Source: Ostrea edulis
Taxonomy: Eukaryota
NCBI RefSeq assembly: GCF_947568905.1
Contig: NC_079170.1
Span: 42,966,001-43,030,000 of the forward strand
DNA: 64,000 nucleotides
Reading direction: 5' to 3'
Below are positions 29,343-42,331 of the stretch, piece by piece (the first letter of the stretch is position 1; the number at the start of each line of letters is the position of its first letter). Both the position numbers and the translations under genes were made by a program. The notes below the pieces were generated by a model. That model saw nothing but the letters and a program-made list of their open reading frames with translations. It was not told the DNA's origin and ran no database searches.

Positions 29343-32300
29343 ATGAAACAAAACAGTGAGATGTCGAAGGTGATCTCCTTTAAAAAATGGCAGGTGCTGT
29401 GTTTGTTGGTGTCAATATTCATTCTGATATACCTAGTGTCTTCCTTCCTGCGTCCCAATCACAAAACTCTGTCCACCATAACTGGACGTGGAACCCACCA
29501 GTACACAAAGTGGCCAGAACTAAGTTTGACCGCTGATTCTGAGGTGAGTATACAGTAGTAAGCCTGGCTGTGGTCATTTTCAAAGTAGACTAAAATATCC
29601 TCATTATTGATTTAATGTGAACATCATTTATCATTAGATTGAACATTAATGGCTGTGCATTGAATGAATAGCACTGGAATAATCCCATTATCAGAACTGT
29701 TAGAAAATACTGTATGTGTAGTTGTTTAAGTGCGATTTACATTTTAGCACCTTTGGCTGTAAAATTGAGTACTAATATGTAGAGAAAACTGCCTAATCCA
29801 ATACCTGTGCAATCTGTTTCGGTTTCATGGGACATGGTTCCATTTCAAATGAATCTAATGAGTGATTTTACCCATCAAACTCTACTGATCGTATTAGAGT
29901 ACTTATGACGCTGCTTAACAGCTGTCAACGTCTAAATTGACAGATTCGAGGATTGTTAAAAAACTATGTGATCAAGCAAATTTTTCGTGTATGCTTTAAA
30001 ATTAGCATAAAATGGTCAATTCTCTTGGAGGTTAAATTTCTGTAATAGATAAAATCAAGGACTGTCCGAGTTCGCAAATTTATTTTCTTCAATTTATTCT
30101 TGATTGTGCATCATATATTTATAATTCCAATGCTATTACAATTGTTTTGATTGGACAAAAATAAATATGAACGAAAATTTACACCACAATGAATTGGAAC
30201 ACGCAATTTCTTCATACACATCTGAAATCAAATAACGTAATGAGGGGATATTATTCAAATTTTTGAAATTGTTAATACAGTGAGCAAATTGGAATTATAA
30301 GAATCAAACATTCTTTTTTGAAGAATTTATCCGTGTGTAAATTCCTGACGGTTTACTCACAAACTTTACATAAAAGTGCTTCGCACTGTTATTCAGTTTG
30401 TGAGTAAAATATCCAGACTTTACACATCGATAAATTCTTTACAAAGAATGTTTAATTCTATATTAAAATGTGTTTAAAATGAGTTTGAATAAAATACAAT
30501 AGTTTATCCAATGGGTAACATTTACAGTGTTTTTGCCTTTGATATCTTCACAATTTGTAATGATAACCATTTCATCACGAATGTGTTGCAGTTGATGAAC
30601 ATAGTACATCTATTTAAAGATATTTTTTGATAAATCTGCATCCAATGTGCAAAGACATTTGAAATGATTGATTTTGTATACATACTATTAAAGGCATGGT
30701 TTAAGAAGTATTGTTTGAAATCTGAAGTACATTTGTCACTGGAAAAGTACCCAGAAATTCTGGAAACATGGAGAAGATCAACAGACGTGCCCTGCCAGTA
30801 AGTCTGATGTTAAACAGCAGTAGTAATGGAACCAATTCTTAGTTAATATGTGACCCTTTAAAGGATTGTGAAAATTTTTAAGATGATGTTGGTACATTGA
30901 TATGTACATATGCTAGATTAAGACTGCATACTTACACTGACAATGATAACAGTTCAGCTGTTTCCTATACATATCATTAATTACATGGATATTTTAAAGG
31001 GGCATTAGCTGTGAAAGTGATAGCAACCTTTTCTCTTAAAATCTCTCCATGATATAGGAATATATATTGATTAATAAAAACATTTATTTTGGGCAAAAAC
31101 AAGAGAAACCTAATAAAACTACATTAGATAACCACTTCTAGTGTAAAGAAATATATAAAAGAAGAATTATTAATTACCTTACAAGGCAATAATTATTTAA
31201 TCCCCAAAATTGCATATTCATGTGCTTGCTTTGAGGTTGAAATAATTACATACTGGTGTGATTACTGAAATATATAGTAAAGAGCAATTTTCATTGAATT
31301 CAATTTGTGGTGACAAAATGACAGTTAATAGCCCTTTAATTACATGTGTATTATGATTACATGTAATATACCATTGATTACATGTGTATCCTTAATTACA
31401 TGCATATAAATAATTTCATGCATGTAACAAATTAATGTACATGCATATCTCATTAATTTCATGCATAAAATTAATTACATGTATATTTTAATTAAATGTG
31501 TATCATTGATTAGACTGATTGCATGTGTATCTTTAAATACATGTTATCATTAATTACATCTATATTATTAATTACATATGTATTATTAATTAAATGGTAA
31601 TAATTAATTTCATGCAAATCTTTAATAGCATGTATACCAGTAATTATATGCATATCATCAATTACATATTTATTATTAATTACATGTATATATCGTCATT
31701 CACATGCATATATGTGTATGCATTTACCCAAACAGTTGAAACTGTTTGAAATGTAATATTTAGTGCCTGCGTGAAACAAATGCATTGTAATGAACAGTCG
31801 ACATATCTTCAACATTTCATTATCTTGATCTTACTTAGTGTATCTTACGTATATGTTTCCAGAGATTTGTACAAGAGATATTCTTCTATCTTCACAATCA
31901 CTGAACATGCAGCCAAGGTAGTAATCCCAGAATCCTTTGCTGCAAAGGTCAAAGGTTGGCTTGGAGGAAATGTGGAACTCTTTGACAATGTGAAGGATCA
32001 GGTTGGTACAGGGTCTGTTTGATTTTAAGAAGTCAAAGAATTTGAGAACTTTTTAAAATAACTTGTTGTCTAAATACCATGTCATTTGTGTACTAATGAT
32101 GAATCAATTTAGAACCATATTCTATATATCTTGTATAACATTTTAATTCATTTTGTTTTCATGAATGCATATTTTCAAAGTTTGATACTTTCACTTCAGA
32201 GAATCCTTTTTATCTACAATGAATACACAAGAGAACAAAATGTGTACAATCCACTGAGAGAAAAAAGACCCATGTCTAAACCCCCAAGACCGGAGAGAGA

Positions 32301-32491
32301 GTAGTGAGTGTGTTTCTTAACGACTGATGCAATGATTGATAGTTTGTTTTAAGAGAATAAATTGTACTATCCCCCCAGGAAAGTTTGAGGGGGAGGGGAA
32401 ATGATTATATGCATGTGTGTGTGACACTGATATAAAATATAAAAAGCATCAGATTTCATATAGTGTTTTAAATATAATTCCAGTTGCAGAA

Positions 32492-32535
<44 letters not shown>

Positions 32536-41295: not shown

Positions 41296-41330
<35 letters not shown>

Positions 41331-42331
41331 ATAAGGACACACTGTGTAAATGTGCATATTCCCAGGAAATTCTGATTCAATAATTTTTTGGAAGTTTTGT
41401 CTTTTTTGAACTTCGAATTTAAAGCCTGTCTGCCCTGTTCTTGCAGTAATGCATAGCATAACCATTCACTATGTGAGGCATTGTCAAGCAATATTGGAAC
41501 ATGGGTATGTGAGCTTGCTCACTTTTGCTTTATTTCATTTATATTTTTGTTTAAATACTTAAGAATTTAAATGTAAGTAATAGATTATATTTCTTTGTTG
41601 TTTTAGTAGAAAAAATTGCATAATGCAGGTTATGAATTTTTTCTGCAATGCTTACTGTGCATACCTTGATCAACAGATAAAAAGGGGGAAAAAAGCATTT
41701 TATTGTTTAACTTTTTGTACACCGTCTAATAAATGGGAGTAACGGAGATTGGGACATTAATTGTTGGGACACTGCACCGAGCTCTTGATGAGACAGTGAT
41801 TTACGAATTGATTCTTTGCAGGACAGGGAGGATAATTTGGGCAGGATTCCTGCGTATGCGCGTCTGATAACGCGAGGTCCAGTGGAGGATATACGATCAG
41901 ACATCAGCTCGTTAGAACTGTTTTCTGTGAGTTTCATGCCTGATTTATTTTAACAAAATTGGAGATTAATCAACATACCTATGTAAATTATTGAAAAATT
42001 ACGCTCAAACTTGACACATCTAGAATTTGGCATTTGTTGTAAGAGCTTAAGGTACTTTCGCGTTGTACCTGTATATTCTGATAAAATGAAATTCTGTATC
42101 ATGTTTCACTCTTAAATATGAGAAATCTTCCTATCAGTTGATAGTTTTTTTTTTTTGTTCATGCATACTGTATCTGTATAATATACATTTACATGCATTT
42201 TAATTATCGCATTGTGTAATTGTGAAATCTTTTTCTTGATTTAGGCTCAGAATGCTAACACAGACCCATACAAAGTAATACAGTACATCAGGAAATCCAT
42301 AAAGAAACGTGACCGAAGAAGCAAGAGCTAA
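29343..42331 (+). CDS. Type II membrane protein with GalT/HIT-superfamily nucleotidyl-transfer/hydrolase domain, 12 coding exons, 460 aa
   Basis: Exons 29343-29543, 30694-30797, 31863-32001, 32200-32303, 35755-35811, 35904-36071, 36440-36570, 37042-37184, 39736-39820, 40037-40095, 41822-41926, 42245-42331, all GT..AG and phase-consistent, total 1383 nt. N-terminal TM WQVLCLLVSIFILIYLVSSFL; GalT-like NPLREKRP and CDFC; active-site-like GGASQIHPHIH. Confidence 0.85.
30297..30462. mobile_element. Palindromic MITE (~165 bp) in intron 1
   Basis: The whole element is an imperfect inverted repeat (agaatcaaacattctt...gaagaatttatc / gataaattctt...aagaatgtttaattct) with TA-rich flanks. Confidence 0.6.
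30998..31335. mobile_element. Kolobok-type MITE (TTAA TSD)
   Basis: TTAA|AGGGGCATTAGCTG ... CAGTTAATAGCCCT|TTAA. Confidence 0.65.
31340..31720. repeat. Degenerate AT-rich minisatellite (taattacatg... units)
   Basis: The motif attaattacatg(c/t)atat recurs many times. Confidence 0.7.
32360..33333 (+). mobile_element. HINE-like element with a poly-G tract (32492-32535) and ~4 x 160-bp satellite units
   Basis: ttgtgaa recurs near 32680, 32847, 33005 and 33163; (catc)n microsatellite near the 5' end. Confidence 0.6.
33376..35624. mobile_element. Non-autonomous TIR element, 2249 bp, with subterminal 21-bp arrays
   Basis: TIR CATACAGACCCTGAAGCGTACTAC versus reverse complement CATACAGACCCTTAAGCGTGCTAC. 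Arrays of TGCACGGAACGGTGAACGGTT at ~33414-33610 and ~35350-35590. Internal duplication ~33780-34140 / ~34248-34580. No TSD found. Confidence 0.7.
37215..37319 (+). repeat. 7 x 15-bp minisatellite (TAGTCCACATGCTCC) derived from the preceding exon
   Basis: Units start at 37215, 37230, 37245, 37260, 37275, 37290 and 37305; similar to exon sequence atggtccacatgtccc at ~37122. Confidence 0.8.
37450..39362 (+). mobile_element. HINE-like element carrying ~6 x 160-163 bp Cg170/BIV160-size satellite units
   Basis: 5' palindrome atgctccccgccacaaagtggccggggcgtat; gttacagatc recurs at 38751, 38914, 39074 and 39236. Confidence 0.7.
37598..38582. mobile_element. PIF/Harbinger-type non-autonomous element, 985 bp
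   Basis: TIR GGGCTGTTCCAGAAAT versus reverse complement GGGCTATTCCAGAAAT; TTA TSD at 37595-97 and 38583-85. Confidence 0.75.
40164..40836. mobile_element. pogo/Tigger-like MITE with tandemly amplified left terminus (~48-bp unit, 40190-40715)
   Basis: TA|CAATAAAACA... and ...TGTTTTGCTG|TA ends. Unit TTACAGTGAAACACAGTTACAGTGAACACACTTATAATGAATTTACAC, ~11 copies, some shortened. Confidence 0.65.
41205..41535 (+). mobile_element. Short HINE-like element (TTATACCCC..GGGTATAA family)
   Basis: ttataccccacgcaacgaagttgcggagggtataa palindrome followed by (cagt)n. Confidence 0.6.

What the first reader, a model, noticed from the sequence alone, without database searches (positions are those of the whole stretch)
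29343..42331. Uncharacterised membrane-anchored GalT-like enzyme, predicted to face the lumen or cell exterior
The 460-aa product has a short basic N-terminus, one TM helix and a stem, then motifs colinear with galactose-1-phosphate uridylyltransferase-family proteins (NPLREKRP, CDFC, GASxxHPH). Characterised GalT/HIT enzymes are soluble and intracellular. Type II topology implies nucleotide-sugar or nucleotide chemistry in the secretory pathway or at the cell surface. I recognise no characterised gene of this type.
Basis: partly seen in the sequence, partly recalled or inferred. Interest (0 to 1): 0.72.

Follow-up and report, generated by a model that had tools for sequence, protein, structure and literature searches.

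The report
Membrane-anchored GalT-like enzyme of oysters
This oyster gene encodes a membrane-anchored relative of galactose-1-phosphate uridylyltransferase. The family is conserved from unicellular relatives of animals to amphioxus, was not found in vertebrates, has never been studied, and probably handles nucleotide-sugars inside the secretory pathway.

Summary

- **Transcripts:** contigs from two runs join the transmembrane exon to the next three exons.
- **Orthologues:** the product aligns without gaps, at 82% identity, to three 460-aa oyster proteins.
- **Fold:** an AlphaFold2 model of the Crassostrea virginica orthologue (pLDDT 91.8) matches GalT-branch HIT enzymes at Z 20-22. The best match is Arabidopsis ADP-glucose phosphorylase.
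- **Catalytic residues:** the nucleophile His290, the zinc ligands, and the phosphate- and hexose-binding residues are conserved.
- **Distribution:** the family runs from Capsaspora and choanoflagellates through sponges, cnidarians, protostomes, echinoderms and amphioxus. No vertebrate member was found.
- **Annotation:** no Pfam or NCBIfam model reaches threshold, and every named member is called uncharacterised.
- **Anchor:** it is conserved, and the flanking charges favour a cytosolic N-terminus. The lumenal orientation is inferred, not shown.
- **Prokaryotic relatives:** soluble archaeal and bacterial homologues sit beside NDP-glucose, trehalose and glycogen genes.

The most likely function is a lumenal NDP-hexose phosphorylase or nucleotidyltransferase. 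The substrate is unknown. I class it as a new variant of a known kind.

The parts
29326..29342 (+). 5' UTR part of the first coding exon. An acceptor AG lies at 29324-29325, there is an in-frame TAA at 29331-29333, and a two-codon uORF (ATG TTA TGA) overlaps the start codon.
   Evidence: Sequence. The X2 transcript contig maps from 29326 and has 88 further 5' letters that do not lie in the laid stretch.
29343..29543 (+). Exon E1, residues 1-67: basic N-terminus, signal-anchor TM helix (about 17-37) and the start of the stem.
   Evidence: The joint 29543>30694 is present in RNA contigs X1 and X2.
30694..30797 (+). Exon E1b, residues 68-102. It carries Cys74 and Cys101, the cysteine pair largely confined to the anchored clade.
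   Evidence: Joints; phases; cysteine conservation.
31863..32001 (+). Exon E2, residues 102-148 (helical N-terminal subdomain).
32200..32303 (+). Exon E3, residues 149-183. It holds the NPLREKRP motif, in which R168 and R171 correspond to E. coli GalT R28 and R31.
35755..35811 (+). Exon E3b, residues 183-202. It holds the CDFC zinc knuckle (C195 and C198 correspond to GalT C52 and C55).
35904..36071 (+). Exon E4, residues 202-258. It holds N222 (= GalT N77), H230 and H238 (the predicted third zinc ligand), and the N242-W-T sequon.
   Evidence: This exon was the query of the large protein search.
36440..36570 (+). Exon E5, residues 258-302. It holds the active-site loop GGASQIHPHIH, with S285, the zinc ligand H288, the nucleophile H290 and H292.
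37042..37184 (+). Exon E6, residues 302-349 (start of the second half-domain).
39736..39820 (+). Exon E7, residues 350-378.
40037..40095 (+). Exon E8, residues 378-397.
41822..41926 (+). Exon E8b, residues 398-432. It holds the conserved R415-G416 and the motif RSDISSLELF, in which E429 corresponds to the GalT hexose-binding residue E317.
42245..42331 (+). Exon E9, residues 433-460 plus the stop codon. It holds N435 (= GalT Q323), D439-P440 and a basic C-terminal tail.

Best explanation
The gene encodes the oyster orthologue of an ancient, vertically inherited holozoan enzyme family with no curated model and no characterised member.

Architecture. The protein has a short basic cytosolic N-terminus, one signal-anchor TM helix, a disordered stem of about 25 residues and a small helical subdomain with a conserved cysteine pair. 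These are followed by a double-HIT catalytic domain of the GalT branch, at residues about 148-454.

Proposed mechanism (inferred). His290 attacks the alpha-phosphate of a nucleoside-diphosphate-hexose and forms a covalent NMP-enzyme, releasing hexose-1-phosphate. The NMP is then passed to phosphate (phosphorylase) or to another sugar-1-phosphate (transferase). R168, R171 and S285 hold the phosphates. E429 and N435 hold the hexose. C195, C198, H238 and H288 hold a structural zinc.

Location. The catalytic domain most probably faces the lumen of the ER or Golgi, or the cell exterior. There it would interconvert or remove nucleotide-sugars.

Shown: the gene model, the TM exon in mRNA, the fold, the conserved catalytic residues and the distribution of the family.

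Inferred: the orientation, catalysis, the substrate class (NDP-hexose, perhaps NDP-glucose) and the compartment.
For: Gene and transcript.

Fold. AF2 gave pLDDT 91.8 and pTM 0.86. Foldseek's top 19 chains are all GalT-branch enzymes, at E 5e-11 to 1e-6. VIA Z is 19-22 for these, against 6-9 for single-domain HIT proteins.

Sequence. The family profile finds HIT and GalT-like PDB chains weakly (E 5e-4 to 0.07). hhalign against E. coli GalT gives probability 85% and E 6e-6. It pairs R168/R28, R171/R31, C195/C52, C198/C55, N222/N77, S285/S161, H288/H164, H290/H166, H292/Q168, E429/E317 and N435/Q323.

Conservation. Q148, R168, S285, H288 and H290 are invariant in 93 sequences, and C195, C198 and H238 nearly so.

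Anchor and orientation.
- An N-terminal hydrophobic span of about 20 residues is present in 72 of 93 members.
- The N flank is more positive than the C flank in 55 of 72 (mean +3.3 against +0.9).
- The same pattern holds in echinoderms, amphioxus, a sponge, ichthyosporeans and Capsaspora.
- The Cys74/Cys101 pair is present in 66 of 72 anchored members and in only 4 of the 21 rows without a detected anchor. Those four lie in the holozoan clade and are probably truncated models.
- The N242 sequon is present in 27 of 72.

Vertical descent. The tree follows the species tree, and the holozoan clade has SH-aLRT 99.

Substrate lead. In 39 loci holding soluble archaeal or bacterial relatives, the genes within 6 kb include:
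- a sugar-1-P nucleotidyltransferase (22 loci);
- OtsA (19 loci);
- OtsB (17 loci);
- PGM/PMM (16 loci);
- glycogen synthase (8 loci);
- GH57 (6 loci).
GlgA-like and TreT genes flank two of the bacterial copies.
Against: - No experiment supports the reading. Orientation, activity and substrate are all inferred.
- In the window's own protein the two flanks of the TM helix carry about equal charge (+3 and +3), so the orientation argument rests on the family as a whole.
- I could not read model coordinates, so the Cys74-Cys101 disulfide is not verified.
- The fold was predicted for the C. virginica orthologue (82% identical, no gaps), not for the window's own sequence.
- Sequence identity to solved GalT-branch enzymes is only 10-15%.
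- GalT D78 is not conserved, and Q168 is His in the oyster.
- The prokaryotic gene context concerns a sister clade at about 30% identity. Most of those loci are related Methanobacteriaceae, so the counts are not independent.
- No known role exists for a phosphorylase of nucleotide-sugars in the secretory lumen.
Confidence: 0.6

Rival explanations
1. Same enzyme, opposite orientation. The N-terminal helix acts as a reverse signal-anchor, or as an anchor in an organelle outer membrane. The catalytic domain then faces the cytosol and acts on the cytosolic nucleotide-sugar pool as a membrane-tethered NDP-glucose phosphorylase.
For: Cytosolic glycogen and trehalose metabolism would fit the context of the soluble prokaryotic relatives. 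In the window's protein and its oyster orthologues the two flanks are about equally charged. There is only one sequon, and it is only moderately conserved.
Against: - Across the family the N flank is clearly the more positive one (55 of 72, and nearly all the deuterostome and unicellular members examined).
- The helix is long and strongly hydrophobic (KD up to 2.8-3.4).
- Some members have 40-57 residues before it, which disfavours translocation of the N-terminus.
- A cysteine pair is present in nearly all anchored members and in few others.
Confidence: 0.2
2. The substrate is not a nucleotide-sugar. The enzyme would be a lumenal or ecto nucleotide phosphorylase or hydrolase. It would act on dinucleoside polyphosphates, adenylyl-sulfate, nucleotidylated proteins or a CDP-linked lipid.
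For: The oyster motif HPHIH is a complete histidine triad, as in the hydrolases Hint and Fhit. Ap4A phosphorylases and a CDP-diacylglycerol pyrophosphatase appear among the structural matches (Z 8-9). Ap4A_phos_N gives sub-threshold Pfam hits in 7 members.
Against: - These matches are far weaker than those to NDP-hexose enzymes (Z 20-22).
- The ancestral motif in unicellular holozoans, a sponge and deuterostomes is HPHxQ, as in GalT.
- The counterparts of the GalT hexose-binding residues E317 and Q323 are conserved.
- The prokaryotic contexts are sugar-nucleotide pathways.
Confidence: 0.17
3. The protein is a catalytically dead binding protein (pseudoenzyme), or the gene model is an annotation artefact.
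For: None was found. The only basis is that no activity has been measured.
Against: The catalytic histidines, S285 and R168 are invariant over more than 90 sequences spanning Holozoa and prokaryotes. The spliced transcripts and the gap-free orthologue alignment exclude an artefact.
Confidence: 0.03

Closest known systems
ADP-glucose phosphorylase of Arabidopsis thaliana (At5g18200; PDB 2h39, 1z84, 1zwj)
   Same: It is the best structural match (Foldseek E 5e-11, TMt 0.72; VIA Z 21.9, 274 residues, rmsd 3.4). The two share the double-HIT fold, the R-x-K-R-P motif, the CxxC plus two-His zinc site and the G-A-S-x-x-H-x-H loop (alignment).
   Different: The plant enzyme is soluble and has no N-terminal anchor, stem or cysteine-pair subdomain. 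Identity is only 14-15%. Its motif is HSHSQ, against HPHIH in the oyster. No Pfam GalT model reaches threshold on the oyster family.
Galactose-1-phosphate uridylyltransferase (E. coli GalT, 1hxp/1hxq/1gup; human GALT, 5in3/6gqd)
   Same: The fold matches (Z 20-21). The motifs are colinear and most functional residues have counterparts: R28, R31, C52, C55, N77, S161, H164, P165, H166, E317 and Q323. The ancestral holozoan motif S-Q-x-H-P-H-x-Q is almost GalT's S-N-P-H-P-H-G-Q.
   Different: - It is not an orthologue: identity is 10-13%.
- The NCBIfam GalT equivalog models are not met. Two soluble prokaryotic relatives score 15-21 bits against cut-offs of 102-448, and the eukaryotic members tested do not match at all.
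- D78 is not conserved.
- Q168 is His in the oyster.
- The protein is membrane-anchored.
- The conserved N-terminal segment at about residues 108-147 is shared only with the soluble prokaryotic sister clade.
Soluble archaeal and bacterial sister clade (about 350-385 aa, unnamed; for example in Methanobacteriaceae, Woesearchaeota and Planctomycetota MAGs)
   Same: Identity is about 26-33% over residues about 108-450. All the motifs are shared, including the segment FxxIFxV...P before NPLR. Like the oyster family, it is not covered by Pfam or NCBIfam.
   Different: These proteins have no TM helix, stem or Cys74/Cys101 pair. Their motif is WNCLxRAGASQxHGHxQ. They lie in gene clusters for NDP-glucose, trehalose and glycogen. 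They form a separate clade (SH-aLRT 99).
Type II Golgi/ER membrane enzymes (for example glycosyltransferases); architecture only
   Same: Both have a short basic cytosolic tail, one signal-anchor helix of about 20 residues, a disordered stem (pLDDT about 50 at residues 41-50) and a globular catalytic domain.
   Different: The catalytic domain here is a HIT/GalT nucleotidyltransferase fold, not a GT-A or GT-B fold. The comparison rests on general knowledge. Localisation was not tested.

Membership tests
HIT superfamily, GalT branch | Two tandem HIT-like alpha+beta half-domains in one chain (the GalT fold) | tested here: met
   The AF2 model of the orthologue P0122 has pLDDT 91.8. Foldseek's top 19 chains are all GalT-branch enzymes. 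VIA Z is 19-22 over model residues 148-454.
HIT superfamily, GalT branch | H-x-H-x-(Q/H) motif with a nucleophilic second histidine | tested here: met
   The oyster has H288-P-H290-I-H292. H288 and H290 are invariant in 93 sequences. Position 292 is H in 63 and Q in 30. H290 aligns to GalT H166.
HIT superfamily, GalT branch | Zinc site made of CxxC plus two histidines | tested here: met
   C195 and C198 are present in 89 and 92 of 93 sequences, H238 in 91 and H288 in 93. They align to the At5g18200 and GalT ligands. Metal binding itself was not tested.
HIT superfamily, GalT branch | Match to the curated family models (Pfam PF01087/PF02744, DUF4921, DUF4931, HIT) | tested here: not met
   There is no hit at E <= 0.1 on 10 members. 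Only sub-threshold hits appear in 3-10 of 93 members.
HIT superfamily, GalT branch | Nucleotidyl transfer through a covalent NMP-histidine intermediate | not testable with these tools
   This needs enzyme assays.
Canonical GALT (EC 2.7.7.12) orthologue | Equivalog-level sequence match and a soluble protein | tested here: not met
   The NCBIfam galT models are not met. Two soluble prokaryotic relatives score 15-21 bits against cut-offs of 102 and 448, and the eukaryotic members do not match. Identity is 10-13%. A TM anchor is present.
ADP-glucose phosphorylase (At5g18200 type) | Same sequence family and the same substrate | tested here: inconclusive
   It is the best structural match, but identity is 14-15% and the profile E-value is only 0.0046. 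The substrate is unknown.
Type II (N-in, C-out) single-pass membrane protein | One N-terminal signal-anchor helix whose N-terminal flank is the more positive | tested here: met
   This holds at family level: 55 of 72 members, means +3.3 against +0.9, and an uncharged run of median 20 residues. It also holds in deuterostomes and unicellular holozoans. The window's own protein has about +3 on each flank. The result is a calculation, not an experiment.
Type II (N-in, C-out) single-pass membrane protein | Catalytic domain shown to be lumenal (glycosylation, disulfides, protease protection) | not testable with these tools
   Only indirect signs exist: the Cys74/Cys101 pair in 66 of 72 anchored members, and the N242 sequon in 27 of 72.

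The most novel reading that the evidence does not exclude
Most animals and their unicellular relatives, but apparently not vertebrates, carry a lumenal GalT-type enzyme. It would phosphorolyse or re-nucleotidylate nucleotide-sugars inside the ER or Golgi, producing sugar-1-phosphates there or editing the lumenal nucleotide-sugar pool. No such step is known in secretory-pathway glycobiology. Its soluble archaeal and bacterial sister family would be an unrecognised NDP-glucose phosphorylase of trehalose and glycogen metabolism.
Probability: 0.35. Interest if true: 0.8.

Novelty: new variant of a known kind. Interest (0 to 1): 0.62.

Why it matters
All characterised eukaryotic GalT-branch HIT enzymes are soluble cytosolic proteins of sugar-nucleotide or dinucleotide metabolism. 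This statement rests on general knowledge.

A GalT-type catalytic domain kept behind a signal anchor since before the origin of animals implies nucleotidyl-transfer chemistry in a compartment where only glycosyltransferases, nucleotide-sugar transporters and nucleoside diphosphatases are thought to handle nucleotide-sugars.

No member was found in vertebrates. None was seen from flies or nematodes either, although those groups were not searched for specifically. This would explain why the family has escaped study.

It is directly testable. The ectodomain is small, is predicted with high confidence and has an obvious catalytic histidine to mutate.

The prokaryotic sister family, which lies next to otsA, otsB, PGM and glycogen synthase genes, offers an easier first substrate assay.

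Tried and rejected
- **Pfam on single exons.** It gave only a weak DUF2704 hit (E 0.0025). That hit ran over intron-encoded residues and was not seen on any full-length member, so I rejected it as spurious.
- **PDB sequence search with one exon.** It found nothing.
- **First gene model.** It had a frame error between E1 and E2. I considered alternative donors in E1, but the RNA contigs showed a missed 104-nt exon instead.
- **The search for related loci with the 15-sequence alignment.** It failed because no stretch was conserved enough. A 4-sequence alignment worked.
- **Two literature searches.** Neither found a paper on this family.
- **His292 as a sign of hydrolase chemistry.** I considered it, but Q and H alternate among clear orthologues and Q is ancestral, so I gave it little weight.
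- **Typing in the spliced 460-aa sequence.** I did not do this, because of the rule on long sequences. Fold and family scans therefore used the 82%-identical, gap-free C. virginica orthologue (P0122) and the family alignment.
- **Model coordinates.** I could not read them, so the proposed disulfide is untested.

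
Full report
**Setting.** The window has about 35% G+C and no N runs. My tree places the product as sister to Saccostrea and Crassostrea, at 82% identity to each. The species is therefore an oyster outside those two genera.

**Gene model.** Stop-free stretches on the + strand and inspection of splice sites gave eleven exons. These left a frame conflict between the first two.

I laid contigs of two runs that behave as RNA (X1, X2) and one DNA run (X3) on 29250-35249. Transcript contigs of 1475 and 1533 nt carry GT..AG joints 29543>30694, 30797>31863 and 32001>32200, and the DNA run lacks them. 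This added a 104-nt exon (30694-30797) and resolved the frame.

The twelve coding exons are 29343-29543, 30694-30797, 31863-32001, 32200-32303, 35755-35811, 35904-36071, 36440-36570, 37042-37184, 39736-39820, 40037-40095, 41822-41926 and 42245-42331. All have AG/GT borders. Together they give 1383 nt and 460 aa.

An in-frame TAA lies 12 nt upstream of the ATG, in the same exon. The contig lengths are long enough to hold the whole CDS. They are supported by a gap-free 460-residue alignment at 82% identity to three oyster proteins: C. virginica LOC111105857, Saccostrea cucullata LOC134256993 and a Logan cluster of 70 sequences.

**Anchor.** One hydrophobic span lies at about residues 17-37 (Kyte-Doolittle 19-mer maximum 2.81), after MKQNSEMSKVISFKKW. 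Nothing else in the protein exceeds 1.4.
- In a 93-sequence family alignment, 72 members have such a span. Its uncharged run has a median of 20 residues.
- The N flank is more positive than the C flank in 55 members, equal in 10 and less positive in 7. The means are +3.3 and +0.9.
- Echinoderm, amphioxus, hemichordate, sponge, Hydra, ichthyosporean and Capsaspora members show the same pattern.
- In the window's own protein the flanks are about equal, so the type II orientation rests on the family.
- Cys74 and Cys101 are both present in 66 of the 72 anchored members. They occur in only 4 of the 21 rows without a detected anchor, and those four lie in the holozoan clade and are probably truncated models. 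This would fit a lumenal disulfide, but I could not inspect coordinates.
- The single sequon of the oyster protein (N242-W-T) recurs in 27 of 72 members.

**Fold.** Single exons matched no Pfam family convincingly. A search of the 1.84-billion-protein representative library with exon E4 (55 aa) returned 106 proteins. Many are full length and align to the whole model at 30-56% identity.

Ten full-length members have no relevant Pfam hit at E <= 0.1. Across all 93 members only sub-threshold hits appear: HIT in 10, Ap4A_phos_N in 7, DUF4921 in 5 and DUF4931_N in 3. NCBIfam gives at most 21 bits to the GalT equivalogs.

A profile of the family finds HIT and GalT-like PDB chains weakly (1y23 at E 5e-4, 1z84 at 0.005, 1hxq at 0.07).

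AlphaFold2 on the family alignment, with the C. virginica orthologue as target, gave mean pLDDT 91.8 and pTM 0.86. It shows a long N-terminal helix, a low-confidence stem and a compact domain.
- Foldseek against the PDB ranks Arabidopsis ADP-glucose phosphorylase first (2h39, E 5e-11, TMt 0.72). E. coli and human GALT follow.
- VIA-align gives Z 21.9, 21.0 and 20.5 for these over model residues 148-454.
- By comparison it gives 13.8 for a DUF4931 protein, 8-9 for Ap4A phosphorylase and CDP-diacylglycerol pyrophosphatase, and 6-8 for single-domain HIT proteins.

The ESM Atlas holds eukaryotic and archaeal clusters of the family. The eukaryotic ones are automatically named 'Galactose-1-phosphate uridylyltransferase' and the archaeal one 'hypothetical protein'. 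None has a common Pfam family.

**Active site.** Q148, R168, S285, H288 and H290 are invariant. N165, R171, P172, C195, D196, F197, C198, H230, H238, R415, G416 and D424 are nearly so.

hhalign against E. coli GalT (sequence taken from NC_000913.3) gives probability 85% and E 6e-6 over 283 columns. The pairs it makes are listed below.

| Oyster residue | E. coli GalT residue |
|---|---|
| R168 | R28 |
| R171 | R31 |
| C195 | C52 |
| C198 | C55 |
| N222 | N77 |
| S285 | S161 |
| H288 | H164 |
| H290 | H166 |
| H292 | Q168 |
| E429 | E317 |
| N435 | Q323 |

The roles of these GalT residues (zinc ligands, nucleophile, phosphate and hexose contacts) are taken from my knowledge of the E. coli GalT structures. 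They were not tested here. H238 aligns to the third zinc ligand in the At5g18200 alignment.

Position 292 is His in cnidarians and most protostomes, including the oyster. It is Gln, as in GalT, in unicellular holozoans, a sponge, nearly all deuterostomes and nearly all the prokaryote-type rows. The complete histidine triad of the oyster protein is therefore a derived state within one orthologous family.

**Distribution.** Named members come from the following groups:
- bivalves, gastropods and cephalopods;
- an annelid, bryozoans, a rotifer, an acanthocephalan and a priapulid;
- a centipede, springtails, a mayfly, a damselfly, a termite, a crab and a copepod;
- cnidarians and a sponge;
- hemichordates, echinoderms and amphioxus;
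- choanoflagellates, ichthyosporeans and Capsaspora.

All are called uncharacterised or hypothetical. A few UniRef labels read 'Galactose-1-phosphate uridyl...' or 'HIT domain-containing'.

A search seeded with a hemichordate member found amphioxus at 60% identity but no vertebrate or tunicate. That search is word-based, so absence from vertebrates is likely rather than proven.

The maximum-likelihood tree follows the species tree. It separates the holozoan clade (SH-aLRT 99) from a clade of soluble, prokaryote-type proteins.

**Prokaryotic relatives.** The soluble proteins of about 350-385 aa share the motifs, in the form WNCLxRAGASQxHGHxQ. They occur in Methanobacteriaceae, Methanosarcinales, Woesearchaeota, Nanoarchaeia, Bathyarchaeia, Planctomycetota and Spirochaetes MAGs.

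I clustered all ORFs within 6 kb in 39 loci and scanned representatives against Pfam. The recurrent neighbours were:

| Neighbour | Loci |
|---|---|
| NTP_transferase plus hexapeptide protein | 22, in several phyla |
| GT20 (OtsA) | 19 |
| Trehalose phosphatase (OtsB) | 17 |
| PGM/PMM | 16 |
| GHMP kinase | 12 |
| Glycogen synthase | 8 |
| GH57 | 6 |
| GT4/GT5 | 6 |

Two bacterial contigs add a GlgA-like gene, and a TreT gene with a sugar ABC transporter and a LacI regulator. Many of the loci are related methanogens, so the counts overstate independence. The association does cross phyla. It agrees with the best structural match, an NDP-glucose phosphorylase.

**Interpretation.** Four things are shown:
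- a real, expressed 12-exon gene;
- a conserved N-terminal membrane anchor;
- a GalT-branch double-HIT catalytic domain with its catalytic residues intact;
- an old, vertically inherited family that is neither curated nor characterised.

The rest is inferred. The domain probably faces the secretory lumen (I put this at about 0.7). It probably works by the GalT ping-pong mechanism through NMP-His290 (about 0.8, given the residues). Its substrate is probably an NDP-hexose, possibly NDP-glucose (about 0.5).

The main rivals are a cytosol-facing orientation and a non-sugar nucleotide substrate. A pseudoenzyme or an annotation artefact is very unlikely.

**Novelty.** The fold and the chemistry belong to a known branch. 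The architecture, the probable compartment and the family itself are undescribed. I rate it a new variant of a known kind. It is of moderate to high interest, because it makes a concrete and cheap biochemical question testable.

Noticed in passing
L008-L043, L001, L002, L007 (loci): An unnamed soluble family of GalT-like proteins (about 350-385 aa, motif WNCLxRAGASQxHGHxQ) occurs in methanogens, DPANN archaea, Planctomycetota and Spirochaetes. It lies next to genes for a sugar-1-P nucleotidyltransferase, OtsA, OtsB, PGM, glycogen synthase, GH57, GlgA and TreT. It is probably an unrecognised NDP-glucose phosphorylase or transferase of trehalose and glycogen metabolism.
   Followed up: partly
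window 42349-42730: A 35-bp tandem repeat of 11 copies (89% matches) begins 18 nt after the stop codon, in the likely 3' UTR or downstream region.
   Followed up: no
window 32492-32534: An uninterrupted run of 43 G lies in the intron between exons E3 and E3b. Reads appear to be cut there.
   Followed up: no
window 38676-39360 and 40181-40712: The introns hold satellite-like arrays, with units of 160/322 bp (about 4 copies) and 48/96 bp (about 10 copies). Many intron segments have very high depth in the DNA run, so they are dispersed repeats.
   Followed up: no
window 29338-29346: A two-codon upstream ORF (ATG TTA TGA) overlaps the main start codon by ATGA.
   Followed up: no
window 53552-53887 (+): An open stretch encodes a CARD (caspase recruitment) domain (Pfam E 2e-6). 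It is probably an exon of a neighbouring immune or apoptosis gene.
   Followed up: no
window 56562-60863 (+): Three ORFs of 269-318 aa lie here. One has a weak reverse-transcriptase match (RVT_1, E 2e-4), so this is probably a decayed retroelement.
   Followed up: no
ESM Atlas structural hit, row 8: A bacterial cluster (Acidobacteriota, 875 aa) fuses a GH57 glycoside hydrolase to a GalT domain. This is another link between GalT-like enzymes and alpha-glucan metabolism.
   Followed up: no
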